Made by a program: the position numbers and the translations under genes
Notes under the pieces: generated by a model
What the model was told of the DNA's origin: nothing
Database searches by the model: none
Seen by the model: only the letters and a program-made list of their open reading frames with translations
In this document: in pieces, positions 3,001 to 55,429 of the stretch
Layout: every line of letters starts with the position of its first letter
How positions within the stretch are numbered: position 1 is the first letter of the stretch
Assembly (NCBI GenBank): GCA_964057225.1
Contig: OZ059894.1
Span: 8,804,001 to 8,868,000 of the forward strand
From: Auanema rhodensis
Taxonomy: Eukaryota; Animalia; Nematoda
Direction of reading: 5' to 3'
DNA length: 64,000 nt

Positions 3001-6000
3001 TAATGCCTTCTGGGACAGAAAAAAACTAGTCGCCCTCTGCAGACAGATACGACAGGTAGATACGACGGCAGCATTGTGGAGAGCAGAGAAAGATGATGCA
3101 AAAAGAGCAGACAAAGCATGAGAGCTAGTCAAAAACAGCCAAGAGTGGTGTGGTGCATCGTTGAAGAGAGAGAAATCGGGAATTTCGACGACAACGACGA
3201 CAAATGATGAATTTGAGAAACAGTCATTGCTCAGTGTGTAGAGGACAATGCACTTTCACGAGCTGCTCCGAGAGATGTACGGCAGTTTTGCTATCAAGGT
3301 GGTTTGTCGTCGGTTGCTCAAAGAAAAAAAAGGCAACAGCAGATAAATGGTTCCGGAAATTCCGTATGCACTTTGATGATCAGACTGGAATGGAACTATG
3401 ACTCTGACGTTTAAGTGCAATCTTTCTTGTCCCAAAACTGCAGAAGCACAGTCGAACCTAAATCGTATTTATTGAATCTAGAGCTATACGAAAAGGACAA
3501 CTCAAGGTGTCATCTAGATACAAAAAAACCGGAATTTCAATGAAGATATTTTACTGATTATAATAGAAATTTAATTCTGTATAACTACGTGAGATTCTTG
3601 AATACAATAGAAAAACAGAAATAAGTTCAGTATTTTCTCTATTCGCCATCCCTGTGCCCTCTTACTATCTAAGCTTGTTTGGTAGAATATAGTTATTTTG
3701 AGGTTTAGTGAAGGTTGTATATGAATATGAAAGAGATATAAGAATATTATATCAAATGATTCATCATTCACTATCATCAAATAAGAATCATAAATGGTTA
3801 ATGATAGATGAAATATATAGCTGAAGAAGCCAGGTGATGACAAATCAGAATAGCATCTTCTCTTCTATCTTTCTCTATGTTCTAGCCGTTTGCCTTTTTC
3901 TTATTTCCGACTAACACCTCAATGCTCTTACATCTAATAAGTCGTAAAAATGACCGTAAAACATCGGAAAAAGATTATTCTGATTCTATGATGAATCTAT
4001 AAGTGGCCTAAGCACCGAATAACCACAGTTATGACGTGCCAGGTCAGAATCGACAACAACATCGATACGATATAGAATGTACGAGCCAGCCGATAGCATG
4101 TATTCTCACGTTGTGAAGCAAAAAACATCTGCAAATGGCTTTTCTTTTCAAAATCGCTTCAAATTTTTGATGAATGATGATGACAGAGAACAAGCCATTC
4201 ATCAAACTACCGCATTCAGATCGTTCATATCTTCATGCGCTATTGCATTGACCAAGTGTCCGGAAAAAAGTCTTCCGTCATCTCATTGATTGGCTTTTCA
4301 TGTTTTTCTGATCATTAGTTGAACCAGCATTCGAACAAGGCTACTGTTTCTTTTTTTTATGCCGGAAACCTTTTTGTTTGAAATGTGCCCGCTGGCCGTG
4401 TTCTATCTATTTTTTCAATAAAATTGATTGAATCATGAATAGTACTTGCTTTAAGATCTTGTCAATCAAGTTAAATGTTGAGCTCATGTTAAGAAGGTTG
4501 TTACAAGTTTAGTCCCTCATATACCTTTGATGCAAGTTGAGTAGTAGTTCATTCTGAATATCTAAGTAGTAGCGGGATTGCATCAATGATCGGCAGAAGA
4601 CAAAGCACTATGCCACTTGACTTGTATACTAGTAGAATGATGCTGCTGCGTACTGTTAGCTTACCTTTTATTGCATGGTTTCGCTTCTCTTTTTGATCCA
4701 ACATAGTCGACGTTTTAACTTTTCAGGTGATAAGTAGGTGAGAAGATCATATTGAGATAAATGTTCTATTTATAATACTATGTATGACTATTCATAACTA
4801 TTCTTATATATATATTATATATTATGTGATATAAGACGAGATGAAGTAATTGGAGACTTAGAAACATTCCACAAGAGCTCATGAAGACATTGAGTGAGTG
4901 AGGTAGAGAGAGAAGGAATTCAAGAGATATAGGTATAGTTGACTCTCAAGCGTACTGTATGCTTCTGTGGCGGAAAGATTTTGTATTCCGGAACCGTCTA
5001 TTGTGCCGTATTGGGTTTCCAACTCAAAGCAGTCCCGACGTGGATTGATGTCGAGCATATCAGGTTGCTAAGCATCATGAAATGATGACGAAGACGACAT
5101 TGATGTATGTTATTGCCGATGTTTTGGCAAGTGCTTGAAATACCTTGAACATCTGTTCATTGATGTGCTTATATGATATTACTTTGAAGAGCTTTTCATT
5201 CAAAGAAAATTAATGATTATAACGTAAAAGAAAATTACATCTACAGAAGCTTACACACTTTCTGAACAGATTCAGATTCAGATACATGTGAAATTTAGAA
5301 TCTGTTTCTCAGCCCCCTTTCTCGCTTTCTCTATTATTTCCAATTTTTTTCTTATATCTTGTATTTCTCTTATAACTATTCGAGTCTATACCATTAAGCC
5401 TAAGTAGCCTTTTATGAAGAGAGTAAAACTTAACACAGAAATATAAGGAGGCACAGAAGATATCTGAACTTTAGGAAGCACGTAGAGGTCGAGGGGTTAG
5501 GATACTAGCTAGGTGGTTTTCGCCGGCTTCTTCGACCAAACGGCCGGTAAACATCGTCGCTTGCTGCACATGTTTGATGATGCCGCCATCGGCTAGCTGA
5601 ACTTATGGATCAGGCTCAGGGGTTCCGTTGCACAACAGCGGAAGCCACTTGAGATTATTCGTCGTTTCGTGATTCGAGCAGTGTCGGCCCGGACACAGTC
5701 GGCTTGGGCTTTCCGGTTGACCCTGTGCAAGTTACAGTCGAGTATGATGGATGCATGGATCACATTTCAAAAACCAACTTTCCTCCTCATATCATGATGT
5801 TCTGATAATATTTCTGTACAGAAAATGAACAAAGCATGCAATAATCAGAATGCTTCACACACAAGAAGGAAATAAGCAGAGATAAACGGCCAATATGACA
5901 GAATTGGAAGTGAAATTCAATAGCAATAATCGGCAGATGTACTCATGACCCCTAGGGCAAGCGCTCATTGCCTTAATTTCTCTGAATAGATATAGATATT

Positions 6001-9200: not shown

Positions 9201-11925
9201 GAGAATAGTACTAGAAAATTATAAAATGCTTATGATAAAAGCTGGCAAAAATATAGATTTGTTGTGTGTTTCTTAGATGTATGTATGTATGTATGCCTTA
9301 GTGTGGACACGAGACCTTCAATATTTACCAGCCTCTAAGAATAAGGTACACACATGTATCACATAGATAATGATCCGTCAAATTTTAAATATCATGCATT
9401 TAAAATATTTTTGAATCATTCAAACCTTTTCTACTAGTTTTTAAAACATATTTCTGAGCTTTAAAAATTGTGGATTGTCATGTTACCCCCCCCCCCTCAC
9501 CCTTTTTCAGAATAAAAGCAACTTTATCTGGATCCCGAAAATAGGTACGAAATATGGATATCTTAACGCCAAACCAGGTAATTCAAGTCCTTTAGTGAGG
9601 ACCAGATGTCTAATTCTCTTTTTCATCTATTGCTCTCCTCATTGCTATTTCCCCTTCTCTTCTTCAATTCTTTATTACTCTCTCCTTCCATTTCTGAACA
9701 ACTCAGCTTACTGGAAACAAAGTGGAAGAGAGAGAGAGAAAGAGGTATTGAGTATCTGACGAAGACATGAAGACAGAAAAAGAGAGAAAGAGGAAGAGAG
9801 GGAGAGAGAGGGGAGAGAGAGAGGGAGTTGGGAAAGAGCACCTCTACCTCTTACCCACCATGTGTACTAGCTCTTCGAACTATGAAATAAAAATGAAATT
9901 TGATATATATAATTAATTAAGTACAACAAGTCCAGTTTTTGTTTCAGTCACTTCATCTGTTTTCATGTTTGGACTCTATTTTCCATTTATTATTTGGAAA
10001 ATTGTCATACGTGGCTTTACCTTGTCTGTAATAACAACTGATGAGAATATCATGTAGGGAATACACCTTCAGTACCTGGACATGTGACCTATATGAGCTT
10101 CGTATGATAGAAAATAGACCCAAATTCATAAGTTTCATCATTCTAAATGAACTTATAAGGACAGTGGCCTTCTCAATTTCGTCGTTTGCCCCCTTTAAAT
10201 TCGGCTCTTGTCTCGTTCTTTTTGCTTTGTCCTTTTAGCAAAAACTTGCGATGATTGTCCGTCTCTTTTCTCTCTCTCTTTTATTCTTCCTTTCTCTTGA
10301 TCTTCTATACTATTTTCGGGTTTTTCCTTTTTTCTCTTCTTTTCACTTACTGTCATACCTCCTGGATCGCGAAGAGAGGCTTCTCATTGATCGTGATAAA
10401 GAGGAGAGACAGAACGTTGTCTCTTCCTGAGCTGAAACGACAATCATGATCTCCCTCCCAAGTCGAGAGAAAATTGAAAAATCATTGAGGACTGAGAGGC
10501 TTAGAATGAGGTGAACCAAACGACGAAGACTGTCTTTGTACGATGATGAGAGCGAAGAGCCTTCGCCAAGTGACATGACGACGACGACGACATAGACGTC
10601 TGTCGTCGTCGACAATCTACTCTCCCTTCTTCTTTCCATCTTGCTGCGTCTCCACGAGCGGAAAACGAATAAGTGAGACTAGTCAGTGATGACTAAGCTG
10701 AAGCTCATCTCCTGAGCACAGTGCTAAGCGATATGCTGCATCACTTCAGCCTATGAGTTAGTCACATGTCTGCTTTCGTTATAGCTCTTAGATATTTCAT
10801 TATACGGACTGAGGATGAAAGTTGGATGGGTCGATATTATCGATGAGATGTCACCTTGCCATAAATGGCTTTGGGCAGTTGAGCAAACATTCATCAGCGT
10901 ATAGATGGGGAGGTCGAAGTCAGGTGATGGGAAGGATTGGTCACAGAAACGGTTGACCTTAGTTCAGCTTATCCGCTTCTTTCAAAGTGCGTTCCGCTGA
11001 AAGCTTTCTCTTTCAATCCTAATCACGTCTTGTCTTCCATCCACTCCCTCAATACTTCATATCCCTTTGCAGGACATATATTCTCGTTTATGCAGTAAAG
11101 TACGAAGTAGAATATCAGCCAGTTGTCTCATGGACGGAAAGCCATTGTCTTGTTGCCCGGATGGATCAGTCCAAACAGTTATAGAATCTCGGCCACAATG
11201 ACCTATTCTTATACGGTCATCAGCGAACTTCGCTGTTGCTCCTTCCACTCAATATGTTCCTTATATGGTCATAATAGTCTTTGTAAGAAGGTCTAGTAGT
11301 CGAATTGACAAGACACTATAGATTTAAAGAACACGTGTATTATATAGATGATCTGTGTCTGTGTGTCTGGGGCCATCGGATATGGACAATGAAAATAGCA
11401 CTTCCGACAGAAAAGGATGCACTCAATAGAACTCAGAAGAGGATTGAAAAGAGTAAGAAAGATTGAGAGGGAGAGAAATAGAGAGGAAAAACAAAATAAC
11501 TATAGAATGAGAGAGCATAGAGAAGCGTAAAATAGAAGACAGTAAAGTGACCAATGTTGATGATGAGGACAGATATCGTCCACTCGGCAGTTGCCGTATA
11601 AGGACTTCAACTTAAAGAATCTGAAGGTTGGAGTAATAGGTTGTTGGTTGTTACTCATCATGTTTCAAACCACTGACAACAGTTGGCGATAGTTGCCAAT
11701 TATGTGAACAATATCAGATGCTGCTAAACGCGGAGCTTGTTAAACATCAAAGTTCTAAGAGACTTTCAAGATTTTATCGGATCGCAACAAAGCTTCTTGC
11801 ATGAAACTTGATTTCTTTGAACTTGAACTAGCAAAAGCTTTCCGTTTGTGCTCTTGTACCGAAAGAACAATATTCTGTAGTATGTATATGGTGATGTGGA
11901 AGAGAAAATAAATAATATTTCAAGT

Positions 11926-11931
11926 TTTATT
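11926..11931 (-). terminator. Probable polyadenylation signal of pha-4 copy A
   Basis: AATAAA on the minus strand, within a ~80 bp block homologous to 17713-17796 at the end of copy B. Confidence 0.6.
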
Positions 11932-12065
11932 GCACATAATACATTCTTTTGTATCTCTAATATGGAAAAAATAAATATTCATAAATGTTTTCAATTTCTA
12001 ACCGCAGAATGAAAACAAACGGGAAACAAGCTTGAGATGAAACATTGATGGACACTACGGTTATC

Positions 12066-12656
12066 CCTGAAGAATCACAACCTAAGAAGACTTGTGTGTA
12101 CACGAGATAAAAGTTGTTTTTTGTAGTTTTTTTGAAAAAAAATTGAAGAAAATTCAACGATGAATGAATGAGAATCACAATAAGAATCAACAATAAAAGG
12201 AAGAAAATGAAGATTATTATGAAAATTTCTATATTAGGCATAAGGAGACATGAAGACAGATGGGAGGAATCACCACGAAAAACCGTAAACAGAGCGAATC
12301 GGATGATGATAAGTACGGAGATGATGGAGAAATGACAGTTGTAAAGACAGACTTTAGATGGTTACACGATCTATGCTCTTGCTTCTCGGCTTATAATCCA
12401 CTTCATAAGGCACTGATCATGTGAAAAGGCTTTAAGCTTCATAATCAAGCTCTAACTTCACTACTGAGTAAAGTGATTATAAACTGAAGAAAGACAAGAA
12501 ATAGAACATAGATCGGCAACTAAGGCATCATGTGAACCAGTGAGAAGTATATATATTGATTGATTGTTTGTTTGTTTATTTATTTGTTCGATTGTTTATC
12601 AATCAAATCAACAGCTGATCGAGTGTCTCAGCTTATTTGTCTATGTACAGATAGGC
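12066..12656 (-). repeat. 591 bp 3'UTR tract of pha-4 copy A, identical to 18143-18733
   Basis: Constant offset of 6077 at both ends, no differences seen by eye, and identical spurious ORF translations in the ORF track. Confidence 0.93.
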
Positions 12657-12672
12657 AGACCAGTATTCATGC

Positions 12673-14980
12673 TTATAAATTGGATGCCGTACTTGGATTT
12701 GTGGCACTGAAAATAAGATAAATAAGAAAATTCCAGAATTTCAAATAAAGGCATGAATAAAGTTGAAAAGAACTAAAAAAAAGTTTTACCTATATAACGT
12801 GTTGGAATAAGGTGTATAGTCAGCACCCATTGAGGTTGAATACGCACTAGGATACATTGATGAGTAATCAAAGCCAGCCTATAAAAATTGAATTACAAAC
12901 TTGAATGAAGAATCCCTTATTTTTTATTTTATTTTCACAGTTAGATATCCTGTATCCTCATCATGCTTCTGGCTATGTTTATCCACCTGGATATCCAGGA
13001 GCATCTGCCGTACACATGAACATACAGATATTGTTGAAAAAACTGCCAGTCACTTGTCAAAAGTATTCAACAAGGAACTAGTAGTTTGAGAGAATATTTG
13101 GGAAAAAAAGTAAAATTTTAAGGATGAGGATGATGATAATGATGATGATGATAGCTAACAAACCTTATTATCCATGATGGTGTTGATGCTGAATGCTGAT
13201 TGCGTCAAGCTAGGTAAGGCTGTTGAGTTGTTGAAGTCTTGGGAATACAGCATGCTGTTGTAATTGTAGGAGCCAAGCTGCAACAACAAAAATAATAAGT
13301 TCAAGTCCATAGGTTTTTGAACATTTAATTTCAATTTTTGATTTTTAATAGTATAGTTTATAGCATAGAGAAAGAAAAGAACTTCTGACTCTAAGTCCAG
13401 TCAATCAATTCTACTAGAACAGGCCTTGTTTGGTTTGCCGTTGTTCCTTTCGATGTCTACCGTACACACACGCACACACACACATACACATACAGCCATA
13501 CAGCCATACACACAAGTCAATTAGGTGTCAGGTATTACGCAATTTTATACGGTTTTAGATAGGTTATACAAACGTAAAAACGCGTTTTCTCTCAGTAATC
13601 ATCTGCACGTTGTGACTCCTTCTAACTCTCTTAGTACAGTATATTGCTTCTTAGCATTACTTACCGTTGGATCACTCATTCCAGCTGTTGAAATGACGGA
13701 ATTAGCTTGGGAAAGGGTGACTGAAGATTGGGAAATGGGCTGCATATGATCAGATCCTACGAGAGACACGTTTTCCTGAAGAAAAGTTGAATGATTAGAC
13801 ACATAAACTGATCGAATATATACCTGAAGTGCTAATGGGTTGTACTCGTCAGAAATTTTGTCTGATTCGAGTTTCATGGAATAAATTTTCTCAGATTTCT
13901 GACTTCCAATAGACGGTATACTAGTAACGCTTGGAGTGGTGCTAACTAAAGACTGATCGCTTAAGCTCTGCTCCGATGGAGCTCCTGAGTTGGAATCTGT
14001 TGAGGATTGGCCGGATGACTGATTGGCTGATTGCTGATTCTGTTGGTTCTGTCCAGATTGGTTTTTCTGAAAATACACATCATTCGTAACAATACTGATC
14101 CAATTTTCATGAGAATCTATTCGCATAAGAGGAAATTGAAATGAATAACGAACCTTTTTTCTGCTTGGCTCTCGTTCCCTAACCTTGAACCTCTTCTGAC
14201 GACGTAAGTGGCAGCCGTTTTCAAACATATTTCCGCATTGGGGATGTAAAGTCCAGAATGATCCTTTTCCTGGCTTATCAGGAGTTCTAGAAATGAAGTA
14301 AATGATGATATGTTCTTGAATAAAGAAAAGTTTTACCTTGGAACTTTGATGAAACAATCATTGAAGGACAATGAATGTCTGATAGAGTTCTGCCAGCGTT
14401 GTTGATTGGTCTCATAGTAAGGGAAACGCTTCATAATGAATTGATAGATTTCATTTAAAGTGAGCATCTTATTATCAGACATCTGGATAGCTCTAGTGAT
14501 GAGTGAGATGTAAGAATAGGGAGGCTTGCTCTTTCCATACCCTCCTTCGCGTTCAATTTTTTTCTGAAAAAAGGTGGAAATGAGAAATGACTTGTTACTT
14601 GTATTATCTTACAAATTCTTCATCGGTAAGATGAACTTCTTCCTGTGGGCCGAGATAGTCTCTGACCCCACGTGACACAGACACGGTTGGTACTGGCAAG
14701 GAGGAGGACCGTAAGGCTGCAAATCAATAGTTAAGCTTCATATATGATTGAAGGGAATGATAATGTTTGTAAAGAATAGAGAAAACTTACGATTATGTCC
14801 AGATGAAGATCCAATGTTATATCCAGTATATATAGAACTATTCATCTGAGCTGGTGTTGAGTTATACTGATATCCATATCCCAAAGGATTTAATGTATTA
14901 GTTGGATAGGTATAGCTTGGATATGTAACTCCATTTGTGGTATACGAAGGTAACACGGATAAGTAGTCTTGGGTAGACAT
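12673..14980 (-). CDS. pha-4: FoxA/PHA-4 forkhead transcription factor, divergent tandem paralog (copy A), ~414 aa, intact
   Basis: Exons 14980-14791, 14716-14613, 14563-14337, 14286-14154, 14066-13824, 13775-13665, 13277-13164, 12878-12790 and 12706-12673 splice in frame via GT-AG introns. Protein: MSTQDY...[15 protein letters not shown]...[17 protein letters not shown]...[38 protein letters not shown]...[15 protein letters not shown]. Confidence 0.93.
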
Positions 14981-16798
14981 ACTGAAATGAAAAAATGAGA
15001 TTAAATGATGTTGGATAAGAAAATGAGAATAACAGAAGAATGAAAACACAACGAAAAATCGATTTGATGCTGAATATACGAAAAACAGTACTTCAAAGCA
15101 AGACATCGTCCAAGTAGAAAAGAATATTTTGTTGGTAACAGTCAGAGAAAAGCTGCATTCTGGAGTTATTGGCGCAGAAGACGAGACAGAAAAGAAAATG
15201 AATTTGAAAATAGAGGAAAGTAAAGGTGAAGAAGAATTGCGACTGTAGCTGTGCTAGAGATGGGGAAACGAATACTAGAAGACCTTGTTGATTCTCATTG
15301 TAATCGTTGACGTATGTGAATTGACGACGTCGAAACAATCGTCTGGCACGCTGATCGAGTTTCGTTCGTTCATCTGTTGCTCTTTTCATCGTCTATACTG
15401 GACGAGTGTAGAAGAAGCCGAAAGCTGAGTGTGTTACCTGCTCTGACTGAGAAACGAAAGAAGAAAAAGAGAGAGCTAGCTGTGTTGAATGGTTTGCAGG
15501 AGAAGTAGAGAAGAACAGGAAAACGGTTGAGAGCAAGAGAAATGACTGAATGATGCAGGGAAAAATTCGGAAAAGAAGGAAAAGAAAGAAGAGAAATAGA
15601 TGAGACGAATGAAAGGGAGACAAACAGACATCGTAGACTACAAGAAATCTGAAGGCACAAAAGGCCTGAGCAATACACTGCCGACGTTTCTACAAGGCTA
15701 CACACATCACATCACATCACAGTACATCTTGAGAAAATGAAGATAAAAGTTTAGAAAAAGCTTATATATATGAATGAGAACAATAAAGTTCTGATGAAGA
15801 ATGAGTAGGTTTTTGCAAACCGAGGAAGGGAATCAACAAGGAAGGAAACAAGCTGATTGTGGTTGTACGGTTTATATACTTGCTAAGCAAGGTTCGATAA
15901 CGAAACCCATAGAAAAATCTTTGATAAAAAAACTTTTAGCCTCATATCAGGAAGCAATTATGGTACTGGAAACGTTATACAGCAAGAGAAGCAGATGTAA
16001 GTTCATAGTAATTCAGATGATAGTTGAATATATGCTAGAAATATTTCAAAAAAGCTTTCAATTTGCAATGGTTTACACTCAACAAAGATGGTTTTGTCAA
16101 GAAAAAAGAGAGAAAAAACGAGAGAGAATGAAGTAGAAAAACGGAAAGCAAAGAACTAATGATGTATAGTAAGCAACTTGAGCGTAGAATAATTGAAATC
16201 GCCGTGAAACTTTATGTAAAGTCTAGGTGTTAGAAATAGAAAAAAATTATTGAATTTAAGAAAAACAATGCAGAAAACAGAATTTCGGAACAGGAAGGAA
16301 TGAGAAGGAGGTAGTACCGTCGACACGTCATCGGATAGCAGGCTTTACTCTTTTAGATTGACAGAAAAGTTTGGAAAACTGCAAGTCAGAATCGGATGAC
16401 GACGCCTACGATGATAAGAGAACTGACGGAGGGGTCCTCGTGCTAAGACAAGTAGAGCTCAGCTCACCTCCATCTCTTTCCCGTTCTCGTTCTCCCACAA
16501 CCACCTAGTCGGTCGTCTTCTCCTCCTCCTCCTCCTCCTCCACACCCATCTCCTCGGCTAAGCTCCTCCCTCCTACAGTAACCGTCGCGGGCTGAGGCTG
16601 GTCGCTGGCCCGTCTATAGCCCCACCCCAGTGCACAGCAAGATTTTCTATGCTATATATAAGACCACGCCTCAAAATCGCAAAAAAAACGAGAAAAAATG
16701 AGTGAGAAATGAACTGCATGCCATTAGAATCTTAATTTCACATGGCTGGTCAGCTGGACAGATAAAAACGGGGGAAGTCCTGGAATCGATATGCCCGC

Positions 16799-16889
16799 TT
16801 CAGGAAGGCTAACGATGCAAATATTTGACCAAACAAACACGGAGGCATGAACACAAATATTGCTCGTCTTGCGTTTACTTTTCCGAATT
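16799..16889. promoter_or_regulatory. 91 bp element upstream of pha-4 copy A with three PHA-4 consensus (TRTTKRY) sites
   Basis: Identical to 21767-21857 while the flanks are unalignable. Contains gcaaata, acaaaca and acaaata (TATTTGC, TGTTTGT and TATTTGT on the minus strand). Confidence 0.7.
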
Positions 16890-17713
16890 TTGCACTTCCT
16901 AATTTGGAAGAAGAGATGGCATTTCCTTTAGACACGAGTAGAAGCATATGAAAGATAATAGAAAACACATACAAAATAGTCATGACAAATGAGGAAAAGG
17001 AAGAAAAGGAAGAAAAAGAAGAAAAAGAAGTGTTATCATACATGATTACAAAACATTCATAAAAGAAATGATAAAATAATTATTAAAAGGAAGAGTTAGG
17101 TAAAGAAATAGTTAGTGACAAGGAACTGAACTTTATCATTTAATGCGATAAAATAATTGATTTCACAAAAAAACATTCAACGGTTCGTAAACAGATGTGG
17201 AAAATTTAAAATATGGACGAAAACATATTGAGAACAGCTTAATTTCATCAGAAATAAATCAAGAAATTGAAAATAGCCTCATATTTTCTCTTCCTCTCTC
17301 TGTAGTGTGCTTCTAACGTCATGAATGCTCGTCCAATATTGCTAAAGAAACCTCCCTTCTTTCTCTCCCTCCCTCTCTCTCTCTCGTTCTTTACGCTGAG
17401 CCGTGAAGCTCCGCCTTATTCTACAATGACGTCAGCCTCCATTTGTCGTCTGTGTCGCAAAATCCTACAACGTTATACGTGGTGCCCGTCAAGTGAGCAG
17501 AAGCTTAAGTTTCGCGTTTGACTCAGGTTCCTGAACCACTTCAATACCTGATAGATTAAAGCCATCAATCTGATTGAAAAGCGAGTTGTCCTTTCAGTAC
17601 ATTTTTGTGTTTTTGTATTTTCCTTGTAGCTAACAGGCTTTGTACATTGCATAGAGTGTTGTTTCTGATATTTTTGTGATTTACGAAGAAAAATAAAATA
17701 AAATATTAAATCT

Positions 17714-17719
17714 TTTATT
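17714..17719 (-). terminator. Probable polyadenylation signal of pha-4 copy B
   Basis: AATAAA on the minus strand in the same context (plus strand ttttattgcacataa) as in copy A. Confidence 0.6.
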
Positions 17720-18142
17720 GCACATAACGTGTTCTTTAATATCTCTAGCATTGAAAAATTAATAAATATGCATATCTGGGAATATTTTCAACCGCACAAA
17801 CAAAAATAATTTGGGTGATGATAGATGAAAATTAGAAAAAAAAGAAACAAAGAAGGATGAAAAATACAAAATATTATTTCAATATTATAGGAAGTGAAAG
17901 AAAATTTGAGAGTTCAACAGATAAAGATGGATGTGATTTGTCCAAAATGTATTATCAGATTTCATGTAAAACTGAATGATCAAGAGATGCGGATGAAGTT
18001 AAGACAACAAGGTTGCAGCTTCTTTCCTATATATCTAAACATTGTTTTATAGAATAGACCTATGACCAGGAGAAAGATGATAGTTATGCTGAAGAAATAG
18101 GAGGGAAGGACGGCTGAAGAACAATCTGATTTGTGCGATTTT

Positions 18143-18733
18143 CCTGAAGAATCACAACCTAAGAAGACTTGTGTGTACACGAGATAAAAGTTGTTTTTTG
18201 TAGTTTTTTTGAAAAAAAATTGAAGAAAATTCAACGATGAATGAATGAGAATCACAATAAGAATCAACAATAAAAGGAAGAAAATGAAGATTATTATGAA
18301 AATTTCTATATTAGGCATAAGGAGACATGAAGACAGATGGGAGGAATCACCACGAAAAACCGTAAACAGAGCGAATCGGATGATGATAAGTACGGAGATG
18401 ATGGAGAAATGACAGTTGTAAAGACAGACTTTAGATGGTTACACGATCTATGCTCTTGCTTCTCGGCTTATAATCCACTTCATAAGGCACTGATCATGTG
18501 AAAAGGCTTTAAGCTTCATAATCAAGCTCTAACTTCACTACTGAGTAAAGTGATTATAAACTGAAGAAAGACAAGAAATAGAACATAGATCGGCAACTAA
18601 GGCATCATGTGAACCAGTGAGAAGTATATATATTGATTGATTGTTTGTTTGTTTATTTATTTGTTCGATTGTTTATCAATCAAATCAACAGCTGATCGAG
18701 TGTCTCAGCTTATTTGTCTATGTACAGATAGGC
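18143..18733 (-). repeat. 591 bp 3'UTR tract of pha-4 copy B, identical to 12066-12656
   Basis: Direct repeat, as described for 12066-12656. Confidence 0.93.
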
Positions 18734-18807
18734 TGCCTATGTGAACATCAGTCTCACTCTCAGTAGGTTGAGGAAAGTTCGTTGACGTAGAGTTGATTTC
18801 CATTTAT

Positions 18808-21800
18808 TCACAGGTTTGAAGCCGTACTTGGATTGCTGGCACTGAAACAAATCAAATAAATTTGAATTAAATAAGAAAGTTCATGAATAATATTTGTTTT
18901 AATATTGTAAAATCATAAGTTATAAGTATGTAAAAGCTAATTTACTGATATTCTTATATAAAATTTAAAAATCATTTTCGAATACTAACCTATATAATGT
19001 ATTTGGATAAGTCGTATAATCTCCTACAGCCGATTGATACATATTCGGATAAACACCAGGATAATCAAAATTCTGAAAACAAAAAAATGAAATGAGTTAA
19101 GTTGGTGGAAATAAGCTTAAGCTTATGCTTATAAGTATGCTCTTAAAAATTACCTTAGCATCAACAAGTGTGTTAATGGAAAAAGCTGACTGTGCCAATC
19201 CAGGTAATGTATTGGCTGCCGAAAAATCTTGTGTATACAGCATATTGTTGTATTGATAAGGATTAAGCTGAAACATTGATATATAAGTAAGTTGTTGATG
19301 CTGATGCTTAAAATAGGTTAGAAACTTAAAAACTTACCGGTGTATTGCTTATACCCACTGATGATATGACTGAGGTGGCCTGAGATAAGGAGGTGGTTGG
19401 AGATGAAAGTGATATAGGTTGAAGCTGTTGATTCTGCCCATCGTCTTTCTGAAAAATTTTGAAATATATCTATTCTAGGCTGCGAAAATACTAACCGTTC
19501 GACTCTGTTGAGTTGGCTGGCCTGTTGGTGTCGTTGATTGTTGTTGCTGTACATGAACTTGAGAATCGAGATCACCCTGACTACCAGGCACTTCTTCAAT
19601 CTTTGGTTCAAGCTTCACTTTTCCATATTCATCATCATTTGCACCATTCTCAATATTGAGCTGTTGCGTTTGTGACTGAATTTGGCTATTCTTCTGAAAA
19701 TAGAGAATGAATGAGAAAACTAGGAGACGTTGAATAGAGGTGAAGAGATTCAGATGAAGTGCTACTTTGAGATTTTTTTGTATAGATGATGCAAAACGAT
19801 ACGACAAATTTAAAAGAGGTTGTTGTAATGACCATTCCGACTGGCACTACTCTGACAAACGTTTTGAGGGCATGATGCTACGTTAAAAATTCTGAGACTT
19901 GCTGGCCTCTTGTAACCAAGACATATGTAGATATTATAGGGGGTAAAGGAAAAGTTGTTCAAACAATGACCAACCTTCTTTCTGCTTGGCTCTCGTTCCC
20001 TAACCTTGAACCTCTTCTGACGACGTAAGTAGCAGCCATTCTCAAACATATTTCCACACTTAGGATGTAAAGTCCAGAATGATCCTTTTCCTGGCTTATC
20101 AGGAGTTCTAGAAATGAGGTAAATGAGCTTAGTTCAAGTGAATGTCAGGCTTTTACCTTGGAACTTTCAAGAAGCAATCGTTGAAGGACAATGAATGTCT
20201 GATAGAATTCTGCCAGCGTTGTTGATTGGTCTCATAGTAAGGGAATAGATTCATAATCCAAGTATAAATTTCAGATAGAGTCAATTGCTTATTTTCAGAA
20301 TGTTGAATAGCCATAGTTATCAAGCTGATATACGAATAAGGAGGCTTTTGGTTACCGTAGCCATGACGTCGGAACTTGTTCTAAAAGAAAATCACATTAA
20401 TACTTGTTCTTCTTCGATTTGAAAGTCGTCATGAAATAGATTAATCGAATGGTTGTTTCATATTAAATGGAATGAATAACGATACCAATGAATTACTATC
20501 ATAATAAGTTTTTAACACATACAACCATCAGATTTAGTAAAAGAAAGACTTACATATTCAGCTGTAGTCAAGTGAACTTCTCCATTCTGTGATGGATATG
20601 AGTTACTTCGTGAGGACGATGGTGAAGCTGTTAATGTAGCTGATGCGCTATTAGGAGTGCCATTAGAATTTGCTGTTGATCGTGGAGCTGAATTTACAAC
20701 TATAAGAAAAAACAAACAAAAATCAATAAAAACGAAGTAACAAACATTAAAAAAAACAGTTTTTATTAGGTAAATAACTTACTTATTGGTGAGATGCCAG
20801 TAGTTTGCATGTTAAAGCCACCATATGAGCTATTCATCTGAGCTGGTGTTGAGTTATACTGATATCCATATCCCAAAGGATTTAATGTATTAGTTGGATA
20901 GGTATAGCTTGGATATGTAACTCCATTTGTGGTATACGAAGGTAATATTGATGAGTAGTCCTGTGTTGACATTCCCTGAAACGAACATCAGTACTTTGCA
21001 AACGAAATGTTTGGAAATGTTTGATTAAGGAATGAAGCAATAAAAAGACAAAATTTTCACACAAATTCATTTGCAATTTGAGAAATAAAAAGTTTTTTAA
21101 TGGACTTGTTGAAGAAAATTTAGATTATAAAGCATAAAAAAATGTTTTTTTTTCATGTTGTTATTGTCGATTCAAAGATTCAACAAATCAACGAAAAAAT
21201 AAATAGAAAAATGGATGTTGAAGCCCATCATAGGACATTGGCAATATCTAACTAAAAAGAAATATTTAAAAGAAATAAATAGAAAATGAAACGTTAATAG
21301 TCAGAATACTTATTGATTCTTTTTGATACTTTTAACTTCATTCAACACTCATATAAGCTGCTGATTTTGGATATTCGATTGTGGTTCACTACTGCTCAAG
21401 TGGTTGGCAGAATTACAATCTATCGAATGAGGAAAGAGGAACGAGATGGAAGAGAGACGAGGCGGGTCCCGGTGCCGAGTCCTCTCGGTCCCACCCTCAG
21501 CCCCCCCCTCTCTCTCTCCCCCTAGCCTCGGCGGCAGGCTCCACCCCCTACCGTAACCGGGCGAGTATGGCTGGCTGGCCTTGAGACGTGTGAGAGACGT
21601 TAGCTTGGGTGTAATAGAGTTATGAAAAATGTTTTTTTTTAAATTTAAATTTGGATTAAGAATAAGAGAATAATAGAGAAATATGTAAAGAAGAAATGAA
21701 ATGGATATGGAGAAGATGATGAGATCTGCCGGGGTGGTCTCGAATAAGGCGTCGATCGAAATGCGTTTCAGGAAGGCTAACGATGCAAATATTTGACCAA

Positions 21801-24654
21801 ACAAACACGGAGGCATGAACACAAATATTGCTCGTCTTGCGTTTACTTTTCCGAATTATGTACTCTGTTCTTCCTAATTAGGTAATCTTCAAAAAGATAA
21901 TGATTGTTTGATAAGTATGTGTAGTTGATATGACGGTAAATCCATAAATGCAGCTACTTTTCGCGGAAAAAAAGTAAATGAAAGAGGAGAAAATGATTGA
22001 AGAAGGATATCCCAAAAGAAGAAATAATTTCTTTTCGATGTTCTATGTAAACAAAGTAGGTGAAAAAATAAATATTTTCTTTATATTTCTGCCAGAAAGA
22101 AAAAAAACTTAAAAGAAAACAAATTAGATAAAAGATATTATTATTAAAATAATAATATTAAAATTAAAAGAAATTCATAAAAGAAAAAAACGAAAAAGAA
22201 TCATTTGAAAGGTTTCAAGCAAAACCTAAAAACATTTTGTACAGAATGAAGGAAACGAAATGGAAAGACATAAACGATAGAAGAGCTCGTGTTTTTGTAT
22301 TCGTTATGGAGAAGAATATAGAGAACACAGGTGCAGAAAAGGAAAAATCGAAGGAACAAGCTTGGCTAGGCAGGAGGACCTATGCTTATATGTTATAGAC
22401 GACAACGACGAGTAGTAATCGTGCGATAAGACGCTGAGAATTGAGTCTCAGGTCTCTCATTGTCTCTATTACATATCGTTTTTTATTTTTTTTTGATTTT
22501 CTCTCTCCATTTCTCTCTCTCTCTTTTTGGTAGTTGTAATGATGCTGCACAACGGATAGGACAATCATAATGTTGTGGAGAATTTAGCTATCAAAACCTT
22601 CATATTTTCAAACTTTGCATTGAACCTATCAGTATCGTCATTGTATTCTTAATATCTGAACATCTTCTTTGGCGGCAGATCAAAGAATTAAGAATCATTT
22701 GAAGAAACGATGGAAGTAAACGACAAGTAGCTGTGAACAACTTCAGGTTTATATATAGAACGTTGTTGATTCGGTGAATCAAGATGCCTTTAAAGCCTAG
22801 GTCAAAAAGGACTGATCTTGGAGTGGGTGATAGGATAGATGAGTGGGTCGGTATAGAGAAGACGATAATATAGAAATCGTATATGGTAGTTGGAAAAAAA
22901 TACAAATGGGCCATGTATATTGAAGTACAAACACTTTGTCTGCCGATGTACAATGGCATTACACTAGATGAGAGAAGTCAAGAGATTCAGAAGCTCAACC
23001 AGAAGAGGAAAACTACAATGCACACCTAGTCCTGACTACTTTTTGTCGCTTACGTGTGCTTCTACTGGTCGACTAAGAAAAACAGATGATTAATCAGGAA
23101 AATAAGAAAAACTGTAATATTATCGTAAACAAGATTTTTTCTTGGTTTATACTGACGATAGAGAAGATTTTTTCTATTCTTGTCAAAAACTTTGTATAAA
23201 AAAATGGAAAAAGCTGTGAATGAATAGAATATCAATTAATATAAAAAAAAAGTTAAATAAAACTAATTATTATTAATAATAATAATATTATTATTATAAT
23301 TTTAATTATAATAGTTGGCTAATAAGAGGACAAATTCAAAAAAAAAGACAAAGAAAAACATTGAACCACTGATATTGCTGGGAGGTACAGTGAACGTCTG
23401 TATGTATGTTGTATATGTTCGATAGATAGAAAGGACGAAAAACCTCACTAGCTTGAATGAAAACATATTTTTCTCTGCGTTGCTCAATGGTCTCAAAGCA
23501 GCATCTGTTCAACCTGATTCTTATCAGTGATGGTCATAATTTCAAATCTGAGTGAAATTGAAATAAACTACCGGCACATGAAGTGACCAAAACAGGCCGA
23601 AGATTACGAAGACACAGAAAATAGACTACATGACTTTTTGAAATGTCAAATGTTTGAAACAGTAACTCTTGATGAGACTTATTCAAAACTAATCTGATGA
23701 TTTATAGATCTGTATTATGAAGTATTTTGAGATTATTCCGACAATAGATATCTTTTCGTATTCTAAAAACTCTCGTTTTCGTTTCCGGGACCACAAAAGC
23801 TCAAAATATTTCTTAGTACTTTCGTTTTGCTATTCATTTCTTTCTCTCTTGATATCATGAAAAGCCTGCAGGCCCTGCTTGCTATGCACCAAATAAAAAG
23901 AAATGAATATGAGAAGACCAAATCGATTCGGTTGCTTCGTTGGTTTCATCTGGAGGGGACCCTGAAAAGCCGTCCTGTTTCCCAGATTCAAAGCTTGAGC
24001 TGGGTAGGCCAATCTGAGGTTTCATTCGTTTAAGACCATCAAGCAAGCTAGAAGGACTAGAAAGGAAAGAGATACGATGAAATAAACAGAGAAGTGATGC
24101 TATAGATGGAAGAAAAAGTAAAGCAAAACAACAAAAAAAGTATTGTTAAAAGAAAAAAATTGAAGAATCATCTAATTTAGAAAGAAAAGCATTGAGATTT
24201 GATAAAATTAACGCTAAAATGAAAATGTAAAAGGTATATGAGGAAGTAAATATAAAAAAACATGCAGAGTTCTAATCTTAGATTAGAGAAATGGCCCTGA
24301 TATCAAGCGGTCAAACAGTTTTTCGACCCATAGATAGTCTATTATTCTCCTTTCCACATTCATCTCTATGTAATCTTATCATACATGACATAGCCTCAAT
24401 ATGATGTTTCATTATCACTCATGCAATAAAGAAAAACTTTAGATAGTCCTAGCAGATTATAAAAGAATGAGACAATTTTTGAACTTTTTCTATATTTTCT
24501 ATCTATTTTGAGGGTTTTTTTGATAAATAAATTTAAAAATAACAATAAATATAATATAAAGTTTTGATGAACAAACCTGTATAATGGTATTTTGATAGAG
24601 TGACGTTGCATCGGCCACCGAAGTGGTTGGTGTGAGGCTGCTGTTCTGATTCAT
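18808..24654 (-). CDS. pha-4: FoxA/PHA-4 forkhead transcription factor, canonical copy (copy B), ~433 aa
   Basis: Exons 24654-24577 (MNQNSS...TIIQ, phase-0 join inferred), 20975-20783, 20687-20554, 20380-20157, 20107-19975, 19693-19496, 19448-19338, 19267-19154, 19072-18990 and 18841-18808. The forkhead domain [62 protein letters not shown] and the C-terminus [15 protein letters not shown] are PHA-4 signatures. A shorter isoform could start at ATG 20972. Confidence 0.95.
21767..21857. promoter_or_regulatory. 91 bp element in intron 1 (or internal promoter) of pha-4 copy B
   Basis: Identical to 16799-16889. Confidence 0.7.
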
Positions 24655-51739: not shown

Positions 51740-52604
51740 ACTAGAAAAAAATTCGATACAAAATAAAATTAATTTGAATTTTTTTTTGAAAAAAAAAAAA
51801 ATTTGATGCGAATATAGATGTGTAGAATACAATTTTAGTTAAATCTGATTACAAAAACAAAGTTATTTATTAGGTTATTGACAAACTGCCGAAGAAAGAT
51901 CAAAATCTTTAATGAGATTTGATTAGTTGAACAATTTCTAATCTCAAACTATTAATTTGTGTTAAAATAATTCAATGCTCTTCATCAATCACTTCTTAAC
52001 ATATTGAACACCACGAAACACAGTTTTTATTAATTATACTTCACTTAATGATGATGTGAATGTATGCACGTATCTGTTGAAAATCCAAAAACAACAAAAA
52101 TTTCAAAAAAAAAGATGATAGTCGATGAAGAAAAGTAGAGATGAAGAAAAAATTGAAATTATTATGAAAATAAGAGGTAGTAGATAGTCATGATATTCGC
52201 AATAAATTCGTTTTCGGTATAAAATTGAATGAATACTAGATAATGGCATTAGATGTGTCGAAAACTATGAATTTAAAAAGTAAGGTTCAAACCTAAACCT
52301 TCAAAAACTGACAGCCAATGATATCTTCTACGAACGAAGCATATTACAATGGAATTTTAGAAAATGAAAGCATGAAAGAAGATAAAGAGATAGAGAGAGA
52401 GAAGAGAGAGAGAGAAAAGGATAGCTCCCATTCGCATCATACACAAATACACATACTCCTCTTATCTCTTTTGCTCATTTCTTTTTCTCTTCAACATCAT
52501 GTTTTTTATCTTTATCTTTTCATGTCTGATAATCTATCTTTTGTTCTCTAACATCTTCGTCATACTTCCCTCATTGCTGTTGCTGCAAAATCTTCTTGTC
52601 CCTA

Positions 52605-53344
52605 GAAAAAGAGAAATGGTAGAAACTAAGCGGCATCATCTGAGCGTAGAACACTAAAGGAACTATTTGATCTCATTCACGAAAAGAATGACGTGTGAAA
52701 CGCAAATTAGATTCTAATCTTCAGTCTGGGATTCTTTGTCTCGAAATGCGTACTGACCACCTTGTCTACCCATTAACAGACCTTTTCACAATAACAACTA
52801 TCGTTTGATTTTATTAAAATACTTCAAAAGTTAGTACAAACGAGACATGAATCATAAACGAAATAAGCATAAATCGTCTTAAGTTTTACCTGTTCCTTGT
52901 AAGAAATTCCTTATATTAGACTTTACGTACGCAGAATATTCAGAATCTTTCAATGTTCTTTCAATTAGTTTTCTACTTCTCCAATGTAAATTAACAGAGA
53001 GTTCACATAATAGAATATACATACATATGAATATAAATAGGAAAACGGAAAAATAGATTCGAAATAATTTCTTTTTTTTTCTTTTTTTTCTTTCTGGTAT
53101 ATCACAGAACCGTCAAAAAATTGTTGTTCATCAACTGCTCCTTGAAGATGGACAGTACCTGACAACATGATCTGGATTAGTTTAAGTTAATTTCTATTTT
53201 GTTATCAACTTCAGTGTTGAAAAAAACAAAAAAGTAAGAGCAAAATCGACGACATCCAAATTTTGAATAAAATTATTTATCTAAACTTGCATCTTTTATT
53301 TAATTTAATGTTGATCACTCCAACCAGCGATCTGTATCAATATA
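52605..53344. repeat. 740 bp block duplicated at 54818-55109 plus 56316-56784
   Basis: Direct repeat; the second copy is split by a ~1.2 kb transposon-derived insert. Confidence 0.88.
52889..53168 (-). pseudogene. Orphan, disrupted first exon of a sulfotransferase paralog
   Basis: The minus strand encodes YVCIFYYVNSLLIYIGEVEN*, then a frameshifted LKDSEYSAYVKSNIRNFLQGTG|gtaaaa, homologous to exon 1 of the 58330 gene. It is followed only by intron-1-like sequence. Confidence 0.8.
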
Positions 53345-53474
53345 ATATTATATGAAATTCGAGAAAACCTAATCTAGCATTCCAATATGTCTATTACAGT
53401 ATATAAAAAATTTTTCTCTTAAAGCTTATTAATTTTATCAAGAAATGGTACTCAGAAGTTATATGAGCTAACCA

Positions 53475-54781
53475 TCAGTTTTCAGTGGGAAGTGGATAAC
53501 CAAAGATCTCATAATCATATTTGAAAATATCAAGAAATATTGAAAGTAAAGTAGAATTATTTCTGATTTCGAAGTTGATTTTAGGCTGAATATCCATTTC
53601 TTCAGTTGCATGAGCTGTCTTTTCTTTTCCTTTAACCAAACATTGCAGAATTTTTAAGTGAACATCAAACTTACTCATTAATTCATGACGAATGTACAGA
53701 ATTTTGGACATGGGAACCTTCATCTGTGATAGGGTGGATAACAAGTCATCTATCATTTCCACTTTTTCTTTCCCACTTTTGTATTTCAGAAATGTAGCAG
53801 TTTCATATACCATGGACATGTTGCAATACCTGTAGTTTATATTATTTTTGGCTATCATCTTAGTTTTTACCATGTTTGAGGTGATAAGTGAACAAGAGGA
53901 TGACTATAAGGATATCCTTCAATACCATTAGTTGCACGTTCTCTCAGGGTTTGTCTCAAGTTTGTTAGAACACAATGCAAGTTCTTAGGATTACAATTCA
54001 GACAATTTTTAACCCTTCAAGAAAATTTTTAAGTAAATTGTGAATTGTGCAAACTTAAGGCATTGATCCAAGTAACCACTCACAAATCTAGATAATGGAT
54101 CACGTACCATTACTAGCATATTGAAACCAAATGGAAGCCTTTTTTTTAATTCTTCAAACGAATCTACATAATTTCGAGATTCACATATTCTGAAAATGTT
54201 ATTGATTTGGCTAAAATCTTCAAAAATCTACCTGTCCTCCCACAATCCAGTTGAAATACTCTTGTTTTGTTGAAGAAACTCCTCAGTATCGTACAAGTAG
54301 CATAGTATATTGGTTAAAACAGTGGACATAGACTTTAAAATTCTACAGTGACCTAACCGATGAGCTGGTACAATCTGAATTGAAATACTTCACTTTTCAG
54401 AAAATTATTACAGAATACCGAGTATTGAGATTTTGACATCTTTTGAAAAGGTGGAATTGGTGAACTCATAACCGCTCAAACATAGGAAATATTTACATTT
54501 AAAAAACAATTTATATACTTACTGTAATTCTGAAGAATTGTATGAATATTTTCCTTAACTTTCATGCTATACGGATCGGAAGAAATTTCAAAATAGTCAA
54601 ATAGAAAATTTGATAGTTCATATTTTTGCGATTGAGTTTGAGTTTGATTATACAATATAATACACGAAAGTAATATTGAAATAGTTAGTGAAATATTCAA
54701 TAATTTACACTTAAAAATTATATGTTTTTTATTTTTTAAATTGAAATAATTTGAATCTAAAAATGGTTCTGTGTCTGCCAT
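53475..54781 (-). CDS. Sulfotransfer_2 family (carbohydrate sulfotransferase-like) type II membrane protein
   Basis: Seven exons in frame, with an N-terminal TM and the motifs HCRILKSMSTVLTNILCYLYD, VRDPLSRFVSGYLDQC, HLSPQTWYC and IFKYDYEIFGY. Confidence 0.87.
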
Positions 54782-55183
54782 GCCTGAAATTAGATACTAG
54801 AATAATATTTGTTTCTTGAAAAAGAGAAATGGTAGAAACTAAGCCGCATCATCTGAGCGAAGATCACCGAATAAACTGTTTGAACTCATTCACGAAAAGA
54901 ATGACGTGTGAAACGCAAATTAGATTCTAATCTTCAGTCTGGGATTCTTTGTCTCGAAATGCGTACTGACCGCCTTGTCCGCCGATTGGCTGGACAGTTT
55001 CATATTGACAATTATCGTTGGATTTTATTAAAATACTTCAAAAGTTATTACAAACGAGACTTGAATCATAAACGAAATAAGCATAAATCGTCTTAAGTTT
55101 TACCTGTTCTTTAAGCCATCAGCGTCTACAAAATGAAATTTCGGGGAAGATGTATATACATATGCATTAAAGTTCTTAAAATC

Positions 55184-55249: not shown

Positions 55250-55429
55250 TCGCGTGATGAATAACCGTTTAGTCGGTTATACCATCAGTGTCAACAAAAA
55301 TAAAATTGGATTATTTGAGGATTTTCGCACATGACTGTATATATTAAAAAAGTGTTTGAAATTGAAATTATTTTTTAAAAATTTATATTATTACTTTTGA
55401 TTTAGCTTTTGCTCTCGTTTTCTGAAATT

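What the first reader, a model, noticed from the sequence alone, without database searches (positions are those of the whole stretch)
12066..21857. Mosaic homogenisation between the pha-4 paralogs confined to functional modules
Tracts with sharp edges that appear identical sit amid divergence: 591 bp of 3'UTR (12066-12656 = 18143-18733), 116 bp of N-terminal coding sequence including synonymous sites (14838-14953 = 20830-20945), and a 91 bp upstream element. The helix-3/wing coding region (about 14159-14426 vs 19980-20245) is near-identical apart from its intron interior. Synonymous and UTR identity of this length points to interlocus gene conversion. Its survival only in these modules suggests selection keeps regulation and DNA specificity shared while other parts diverge.
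Basis: partly seen in the sequence, partly recalled or inferred. Interest (0 to 1): 0.82.

Follow-up and report, generated by a model that had tools for sequence, protein, structure and literature searches.

The report
Gene conversion between tandem pha-4 genes
Two old, neighbouring copies of the worm foregut master gene pha-4/FoxA have had several short stretches, including 591 letters of their 3' tails, made identical by copying from one gene to the other; this is a clear example of a well-known process, not a new one.

Summary
The window holds two intact tandem FoxA/pha-4 genes on the minus strand: A, 414 aa, and B, 433 aa. Maximal exact matches between them are 591 bp (3'UTR), 116 bp (first shared coding exon), 91 bp (upstream element), and 55, 52 and 38 bp in the forkhead exons. 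Everything else is diverged: introns cannot be aligned, synonymous sites are saturated and the proteins are 62% identical.

Auanema sp. JU1783 carries the same A/B pair, so the duplication predates the split of the two species. In a four-sequence comparison, sites inside the coding tracts group by species (21 sites against 2; ML quartet bootstrap 100%). Sites outside group by paralog (78 against 10; bootstrap 100%). The 116-bp tract differs at 21 of 116 positions from its orthologue, and the 591-bp tract aligns between species only at two short motifs. Purifying selection alone therefore cannot explain the identity.

Interlocus gene conversion is well supported and probably recurs in both lineages. 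The 91-bp element is also conserved between species. The scan has noted other conversion loci in this genome.

The parts
12673..14980 (-). pha-4/FoxA paralog A, coding span. It has 9 coding exons and encodes 414 aa: 14980-14791, 14716-14613, 14563-14337, 14286-14154, 14066-13824, 13775-13665, 13277-13164, 12878-12790, 12706-12673 (stop TAA 12673-12675). It has no counterpart of B's first exon.
   Evidence: The local model has an open frame and all introns are GT-AG. Pfam Forkhead E = 1.5e-29. It is 84% identical to JU1783 protein P0001.
18808..24654 (-). pha-4/FoxA paralog B, coding span. It has 10 coding exons and encodes 433 aa: 24654-24577, 20975-20783, 20687-20554, 20380-20157, 20107-19975, 19693-19496, 19448-19338, 19267-19154, 19072-18990, 18841-18808 (stop TGA 18808-18810).
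   Evidence: The local model has an open frame and all introns are GT-AG. Exon 1 was found by tblastn. Pfam Forkhead E = 3.6e-30. It is 83% identical to JU1783 protein P0065.
12066..12656 (-). 3'UTR conversion tract, copy A. It is 591 bp, 100% identical to B, and starts 17 nt after the stop codon.
   Evidence: blastn and exact-match scan; only two copies in the genome; four-UTR alignment.
18143..18733 (-). 3'UTR conversion tract, copy B. It starts 75 nt after the stop codon. The intervening 74 nt are B-specific and partly conserved in JU1783 B.
12642..12649 (-). UGUACAUA motif (matches the PUF-type UGUANAUA pattern) at the proximal end of the tract. It is present in all four UTRs (window A and B, JU1783 A and B). 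The B copy lies at 18719-18726.
   Evidence: the link to PUF proteins rests on recalled knowledge, not on a test
12509..12536 (-). 28-nt UTR core conserved between species (27/28) in both paralogs. The B copy lies at 18586-18613.
   Evidence: blastn against L007 and alignment
14838..14953 (-). Conversion tract in the first shared coding exon, copy A (codons 10-48 of the MSTQDY... start). It is 116 bp and 100% identical to B.
   Evidence: There are 0/116 differences between the paralogs and 21/116 against the JU1783 B orthologue.
20830..20945 (-). The same tract in copy B.
14332..14424 (-). Forkhead helix-3 region ([28 protein letters not shown] plus the donor site), copy A. It is 94.6% identical to B 20152-20244, against 84% to orthologues. 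Identity switches sharply to 63% upstream of 14425.
14242..14296 (-). Exact 55-bp match to B 20063-20117. It covers the last 10 nt of the forkhead intron plus the first 45 nt of the next exon ([14 protein letters not shown]).
   Evidence: by-species sites
14158..14209 (-). Exact 52-bp match to B 19979-20030 (the end of the forkhead domain). This stretch is also nearly invariant between window B and JU1783 B, so conservation rather than conversion may explain it.
16799..16889 (-). 91-bp upstream element, copy A, about 1.8 kb upstream of A's ATG. It carries three TRTTKRY (FoxA-type) motifs.
21767..21857 (-). The same 91-bp element inside intron 1 of B. It is about 90% identical to JU1783 B intron 1 (L007 2986-3080).
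11907..11974 (-). Conserved block around the probable poly(A) signal (..TGTGCAATAAAA..) of A. The B counterpart lies at 17695-17762 and is 75% identical. This block sets the probable UTR ends.
   Evidence: inferred, no RNA data

Best explanation
The locus holds two ancient tandem duplicates of the nematode FoxA gene pha-4. B is the full gene. A is a partial duplicate that starts within B's intron 1, so it lacks exon 1 but keeps a copy of the intronic element. The duplication happened before this Auanema species and Auanema sp. JU1783 separated, and both copies have since been kept under purifying selection.

On this diverged background, several separate short stretches have been overwritten by non-reciprocal copying between the two genes, which lie 6 kb apart. 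This is interlocus, or ectopic, gene conversion: a break in one copy is repaired using the other as template. The stretches are:
- 591 bp of the 3'UTR;
- 116 bp of the first shared coding exon;
- the helix-3/wing part of the forkhead exons, including intron ends;
- probably the 91-bp upstream element.

The tracts differ in age (0% to about 5% divergence) and are separated by sequence that cannot be aligned. At least three or four independent events are therefore needed. The sister species shows homogenisation in the same places, so conversion is probably recurrent.

The tract edges are where homology ends, for example at paralog-specific insertions flanking the UTR tract. Shown here: the identity, the orthology, the tree conflict and the lack of cross-species conservation. 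Inferred: the repair mechanism, the recurrence and the UTR extent.
For: 1. Exact tracts of 591, 116 and 91 bp lie in a 40-50% identical background. Each of the 591-bp and 91-bp sequences occurs only twice in the genome.
2. JU1783 has the same A/B tandem pair. The protein tree gives (wA,jA) 100%, (wB,jB) 99% and A+B 98%.
3. Synonymous sites between the species are saturated (pS 0.65-0.9). Those between the paralogs are also saturated outside the tracts.
4. The N-terminal tract has 0/116 differences between paralogs, 21/116 against the JU1783 B orthologue and 13/74 against the A orthologue.
5. Four-sequence site patterns: inside the tracts, 21 by species, 2 by paralog and 1 of the other pattern. 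Outside, 10, 78 and 10. Fisher P = 4e-13; run test P <= 1e-5.
6. ML quartets switch topology with 100% bootstrap each way.
7. The UTR tract aligns with the JU1783 UTRs only at UGUACAUA and a 28-nt core.
8. The short-read JU1783 assembly breaks into N-runs inside the N-terminal exon and 99 bp into both UTRs, where its two copies are 98% identical. This is what unresolved paralog-shared repeats would produce.
9. Identity extends into the intron, which protein-level selection would not produce.
10. Tract sizes fall within the 12-2,958 bp range reported for Caenorhabditis paralogs (PMC3966223).
Against: A few real differences inside the tracts could therefore have been polished away.

Only one sister species is available. 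Its assembly has gaps exactly where the tracts lie, so part of its 'by species' signal rests on contig ends that overlap by 50 bp.

The tract limits used for the inside/outside test were chosen after seeing the paralog identity.

For the 91-bp element and the last 82 nt of the forkhead domain, cross-species conservation is high enough that conversion is not needed.
Confidence: 0.85

Rival explanations
1. Conversion happens, but its restriction to these modules is maintained by selection. On this view the two FoxA paralogs must share DNA-reading residues, an N-terminal motif and post-transcriptional and autoregulatory control, so converted alleles are favoured there and rejected elsewhere.
For: The same modules are homogenised in both species: the N-terminal exon, the helix-3 region and the proximal 3'UTR. 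The UTR tract starts at the same conserved UGUACAUA in all four UTRs. The upstream element holds three FoxA-type motifs, against 0.28 expected (P = 0.003).
Against: Most of the 591 bp is not conserved between species, so little of it is visibly constrained. RNA folding of the tract is unremarkable, with z = -1.6. Homology-dependent conversion sustains itself and ends at indels, which is where the UTR tract ends. No population data or expression data are available.
Confidence: 0.25
2. The identity is an assembly or polishing artefact. On this view, reads from one copy were used to correct the other, so the true copies differ.
For: Exact 100% identity over 591 bp is what collapse would give, and no reads could be laid on the region.
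Against: The tracts are far shorter than long reads and sit in unique flanks. Polishing cannot create identity from sequence that does not align, so the copies must already be near-identical. Several tracts carry scattered real differences, for example 5/93. The independent JU1783 assembly shows the same paralog-shared stretches and by-species sites. There are no extra copies or haplotigs in the genome.
Confidence: 0.05
3. Purifying selection alone, on nucleotides that must not change, keeps the tracts identical without any copying.
For: The 91-bp element is about 90-97% identical to JU1783. The last 82 nt of the forkhead domain differ at only 4 positions between window B and JU1783 B.
Against: Orthologues differ at 18% of positions in the 116-bp tract. 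The UTR tract does not align between species outside about 36 nt. Synonymous and intronic positions group by species.
Confidence: 0.04
4. A recent partial duplication or non-homologous patch insertion placed a copy of one gene's UTR segment into the other, rather than homologous conversion of an ancestrally shared UTR.
For: The tract has sharp edges. Its distal end in copy A runs on into A-specific flank that is orthologous to JU1783 A (L007 12735-12781), so A looks like the native context.
Against: In both species the paralog-shared UTR stretch begins at the same motif just after the stop codon, which argues for an ancestrally homologous UTR. The poly(A) block downstream is also homologous between A and B at 75%.
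Confidence: 0.05

Closest known systems
Concerted evolution of tandem C. elegans paralogs col-12/col-13, the hsp16 modules and act-1/act-3 (reviewed in PMC3966223)
   Same: Nearby paralogs show near-100% identity in defined segments with fully diverged flanks. The tracts can include introns. Paralogs group by species when orthologues from sister species are added.
   Different: In those cases most or all of the coding region is homogenised. Here the genes are 62% identical proteins, and only short islands are converted. The longest island lies entirely in the 3'UTR.
fog-2/ftr-1 and zim/him-8 gene conversion in Caenorhabditis (PMC3966223)
   Same: These are short mosaic tracts of tens to hundreds of bp between a gene and its partial duplicate. 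Some regions stay closed to conversion, which has been read as functional divergence.
   Different: Those cases have population or experimental-evolution data showing ongoing events. Here there is one genome per species.
Half-homogenised BarH (ceh-30/ceh-31-like) pair and GalNAc-T paralog tract noted by this scan in the same genome (s1-421321, s1-378878)
   Same: Both are in the same genome and show the same kind of partial homogenisation between diverged neighbouring paralogs.
   Different: They are different genes, and I did not re-examine them. They show that this locus is not unique in this genome.
C. elegans pha-4 (FoxA), the single-copy foregut selector gene
   Same: Both window genes have a forkhead domain, and their best matches are nematode PHA-4 proteins. 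They share the C-terminal ..NTLYSxxNPSxAxNL end.
   Different: The Auanema lineage has two copies. Both read [11 protein letters not shown] where other nematodes have FPYYRQ/QNNQQRW. Copy A lacks the first exon.

Membership tests
Interlocus (ectopic) gene conversion / concerted evolution | Identity tract significantly longer than the surrounding divergence predicts (the GENECONV criterion) | tested here: met
   The longest run of concordant polymorphic sites is 22; permutation P <= 1e-5. The 591-bp exact tract lies in flanks that cannot be aligned.
Interlocus (ectopic) gene conversion / concerted evolution | Phylogenetic conflict: the tract groups paralogs by species and the flanks group them by orthology | tested here: met
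   The ML quartet inside the tracts is ((wA,wB),(jA,jB)) at 100%. Outside it is ((wA,jA),(wB,jB)) at 100%. Site patterns are 21:2 inside against 10:78 outside.
Interlocus (ectopic) gene conversion / concerted evolution | Homogenisation includes silent and non-coding positions that are free to vary between species | tested here: met
   There are 21/116 orthologue differences against 0/116 paralog differences. The UTR tract does not align between species. Intron ends are included in the identical stretches.
Interlocus (ectopic) gene conversion / concerted evolution | The duplication is older than the tracts, so this is not a young duplicate | tested here: met
   Both paralogs have orthologues in JU1783. 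Synonymous sites are saturated outside the tracts.
Interlocus (ectopic) gene conversion / concerted evolution | The identity is real in the DNA: reads span the tracts without hidden variants | not testable with these tools
FoxA / PHA-4 forkhead transcription factors | Forkhead (winged-helix) DNA-binding domain | tested here: met
   Pfam PF00250 scores 102 and 104 bits against a cut-off of 27, on the first forkhead exon of each gene.
FoxA / PHA-4 forkhead transcription factors | Closest relatives are PHA-4/FoxA rather than other Fox classes, and these are the only such genes in the genome | tested here: met
   The top hits are nematode PHA-4 orthologues, including C. elegans 'Defective pharyngeal development protein 4'. 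The next forkhead exon in the own genome is only 53% identical.
FoxA / PHA-4 forkhead transcription factors | Role in foregut/pharynx specification | not testable with these tools
   No expression or genetic data are available.

The most novel reading that the evidence does not exclude
The 3'UTR of the two FoxA paralogs may be a long-lived domain of concerted evolution kept in place by selection. It evolves fast between Auanema species yet stays identical between the paralogs in each species. The two selector-gene copies would then always answer to the same post-transcriptional regulators, anchored at the conserved UGUACAUA and 28-nt core. That would be a case of selection for co-regulation acting through gene conversion rather than through sequence conservation.
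Probability: 0.2. Interest if true: 0.55.

Novelty: new member of a known kind. Interest (0 to 1): 0.35.

Why it matters
This is a clear, well-controlled example of mosaic gene conversion between anciently duplicated developmental regulators. The longest tract lies wholly in a 3'UTR.

It matters in practice. Trees, dS values or duplication dates computed from these segments would wrongly make the duplication look recent. Short-read assemblies break exactly at these tracts, as the JU1783 assembly does.

If the homogenised UTR proves to be selected, it would show that paralog co-regulation can be preserved by copying instead of by conservation. Two pha-4 genes in Auanema are also of interest for how a single-copy selector gene of C. 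elegans has been partitioned in another rhabditid.

Tried and rejected
- More sister species: a word search with the 73-aa N-terminal reading frame found nothing. The search with P0065 found no relative closer than JU1783; the next was Diploscapter at 52%.
- Outgroup loci: the C. elegans, C. briggsae and N. brasiliensis loci are not on record. In Diploscapter pachys and C. auriculariae only the forkhead exons align, so these species cannot test conservation of the UTR, the N-terminal exon or the upstream element.
- Dispersed repeat or transposon: rejected. The 591-bp tract and the 91-bp element each have only two copies, and B's distal UTR is unique.
- Embedded RNA gene: Rfam finds nothing in the tract. 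The fold z-score is -1.6.
- Young whole-gene duplicate: rejected by the JU1783 orthologues.
- Donor direction: only a hint that A is the native context at the distal UTR edge. The B side in JU1783 is a gap.
- Literature: no paper on duplicated pha-4 in Auanema was found.
Full report
**What is there**

The window is eukaryotic. Other notes of this scan place the genome in the nematode genus Auanema; I did not verify that myself beyond the best protein hits. The window's own assembly is 181 Mb in 112 contigs.

Two forkhead genes lie head to tail on the minus strand. I built local models guided by the two Auanema sp. JU1783 proteins P0001 and P0065. Both models give open frames in which every intron is GT-AG:
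- Gene A has 9 coding exons and encodes 414 aa (14980 to 12673).
- Gene B has 10 coding exons and encodes 433 aa (24654 to 18808).

B has an extra first exon (24654-24577) that A lacks. A's ATG sits directly behind an acceptor-like site (ttcag|T ATG). A therefore looks like a partial duplicate that began inside the ancestral intron 1.

Both first forkhead exons match Pfam Forkhead at about 1e-29. The best database matches are nematode PHA-4/FoxA proteins. The own genome holds no third copy.

The joined models were only translated, aligned and put in a tree inside local scripts.

**Checking the observation**

blastn, a self-comparison and an exact-match scan confirm the maximal exact matches:

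| Length | Copy A | Copy B |
|---|---|---|
| 591 bp | 12066-12656 | 18143-18733 |
| 116 bp | 14838-14953 | 20830-20945 |
| 91 bp | 16799-16889 | 21767-21857 |
| 55 bp | 14242-14296 | 20063-20117 |
| 52 bp | 14158-14209 | 19979-20030 |

Runs of 38 and 26 bp lie in the first forkhead exon. A global alignment of the two loci shows 40-50% identity everywhere else, which is noise. The two proteins are 62% identical. The 591-bp sequence and the 91-bp element each occur exactly twice in the genome.

**Where the tracts lie**

The stop codons are TAA at 12673-12675 (A) and TGA at 18808-18810 (B). The 591-bp tract begins 17 nt after the stop in A and 75 nt after it in B.

A conserved block around ..TGTGCAATAAAA.. 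marks the probable poly(A) signals (11907-11974 in A, 17695-17762 in B, 75% identical). The tract therefore lies inside 3'UTRs of about 770 nt (A) and 1,110 nt (B). These UTR lengths are inferred, since no RNA data could be laid.

The 116-bp tract is codons 10-48 of the first shared coding exon. The forkhead identity covers helix 3 and the start of the wing and extends into both ends of the 50-nt intron, whose middle is diverged. The 91-bp element lies in intron 1 of B and 1.8 kb upstream of A's ATG.

**The sister-species test**

Auanema sp. JU1783 (GCA_943334845.2, locus L007) carries the same pair in the same order: a B-type gene (P0065, 433 aa) followed by an A-type gene (P0001).

- Orthologues are 83-84% identical as proteins, and paralogs about 62%.
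- A protein tree with eleven other nematode PHA-4 proteins gives (window A, JU A) 100%, (window B, JU B) 99% and A+B together 98%. The duplication is therefore older than the split of the two species and appears specific to this lineage.
- Synonymous sites between the two species are saturated (pS 0.65-0.9). So are those between the paralogs in the exons outside the tracts.

Against this background, the 116-bp tract shows:
- 0 differences between the window's paralogs;
- 21/116 differences from JU1783 B;
- 13/74 differences from JU1783 A.

Immediately 5' and 3' of the tract, window B again resembles JU1783 B and not window A.

In the first forkhead exon, paralog identity jumps from 63% to 94.6% at A 14424/14425. 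Orthologue identity stays at 81-84% throughout.

Classifying informative sites in the four-sequence codon alignments gives this pattern:

| Region | By species | By paralog | Other |
|---|---|---|---|
| Inside the tracts | 21 | 2 | 1 |
| Outside the tracts | 10 | 78 | 10 |

Fisher P is 4e-13. A Sawyer-type permutation of polymorphic sites gives P <= 1e-5 for the longest concordant run. Maximum-likelihood quartets give ((wA,wB),(jA,jB)) with 100% bootstrap inside the tracts and ((wA,jA),(wB,jB)) with 100% outside.

**The 3'UTR**

Aligning the four UTRs shows that the window's 591 bp match the JU1783 UTRs only at two places. One is a UGUACAUA motif at the tract's proximal end. The other is a 28-nt core (12509-12536 / 18586-18613, 27/28 identical). 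So the tract is not held constant by purifying selection.

In JU1783 the two UTRs are themselves 98% identical over the 99 bp that were assembled, starting at the same motif. Both then run into N-gaps at the same point. A third gap with 50-bp overlapping contig ends sits in the N-terminal exon. A short-read assembler breaks in this way at sequence shared by two loci. I take this as indirect evidence that JU1783 also has long paralog-shared tracts in the same places.

The tract edges coincide with the ends of homology. B has a B-specific 74 nt after the stop, partly conserved in JU1783 B, and a unique 430 nt beyond the tract. The distal end of the tract in A continues into flank that is orthologous to JU1783 A (L007 12735-12781). 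This hints that A is the native context.

With 0/591 differences, the last homogenisation is recent. The upper 95% bound is about 0.5% divergence. At a C. elegans-like mutation rate recalled from the literature, that is under roughly a million generations. This is an inference.

**The 91-bp element**

The element is about 90% identical to JU1783 B intron 1 over some 100 bp, and nearly invariant over its core. Purifying selection is therefore clearly at work. The window's two copies agree with each other at all four positions or indels where JU1783 B differs, which suggests conversion or late copying here too. The JU1783 A-side sequence is a gap, so this cannot be settled.

The element holds three TRTTKRY motifs against 0.28 expected (P = 0.003). 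That fits a FoxA-bound, possibly autoregulatory, enhancer, but this is a lead and not a result.

**Mechanism and interpretation**

The best explanation is repeated interlocus gene conversion between tandem paralogs 6 kb apart. The tracts differ in age and are separated by sequence that cannot be aligned, so at least three or four events are needed. Sizes and properties match what is described for Caenorhabditis paralogs: mean 117 bp, range 12-2,958 bp, tracts entering introns, and proximity favouring conversion (PMC3966223).

Whether selection confines the tracts to functional modules is open. The same modules are homogenised in both species, which the selection idea predicts. A neutral process predicts this too: conversion keeps itself going wherever identity is high and ends at indels or diverged sequence. 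Most of the UTR tract shows no cross-species constraint, no Rfam match and no unusual folding (z = -1.6).

**What could not be done**

The read-level control against consensus collapse, and any evidence of expression, are therefore missing.

I rate an artefact as unlikely for four reasons. The tracts are much shorter than long reads. Polishing cannot make diverged sequence identical. Some tracts retain scattered differences. An independent assembly of another species shows the same pattern.

**Verdict**

The selective reading is not shown. This is a new instance of a known process, and the scan has already noted similar loci in this genome (BarH pair, GalNAc-T pair).

Noticed in passing
L007 3904-4111, 6150-9905, 12176-12704: The Auanema sp. 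JU1783 scaffold has N-runs exactly inside the pha-4 N-terminal exon and 99 bp into both 3'UTRs. Contig ends there overlap by 50 bp (3854-3903 = 4112-4161 = 9906-9955). The annotated models are affected: P0001 starts at an internal Met because its 5' exon part is in a gap.
   Followed up: partly
window 14162-14243 / 19983-20064: The last 82 nt of the forkhead domain differ at only 4 positions between window B and JU1783 B (pS 0.27 for the exon), while synonymous sites elsewhere are saturated. This suggests nucleotide-level constraint on this stretch in the B lineage.
   Followed up: partly
window 14380-14424 and 20200-20244: Both paralogs in both Auanema species read [11 protein letters not shown], where other nematode PHA-4 proteins in the hit lists read FPYYRQNQQRW or FPYYQNNQQRW. 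This is a lineage-specific change in the forkhead domain. Copy A also has His for Tyr in ENGC(H/Y)LRRQKRF.
   Followed up: no
window 22781-22887: A second conserved non-coding block lies in intron 1 of gene B, 86% identical to JU1783 B intron 1 (L007 2297-2404). It has no counterpart upstream of gene A.
   Followed up: no
window 13462-13607 (-): There is a weak SCARNA7-like Rfam match (29 bits against a gathering score of 65, E = 0.001) in a GT-rich intron of gene A. It is probably spurious.
   Followed up: no
window 58188-60679 and 61511-64000; also 52596-58900: A 2.5-kb direct repeat at 99.1% identity runs to the window's end. A family of shorter direct and inverted repeats lies at 52.6-62.2 kb. 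These are unrelated to the pha-4 locus.
   Followed up: no
protein hits: Several other nematodes seem to have two pha-4-like genes on one contig: Pristionchus fissidentatus (loci 2341 and 2342), Strongyloides ratti, Steinernema hermaphroditum and Caenorhabditis sp. 36. pha-4 duplication may therefore be recurrent in nematodes.
   Followed up: no
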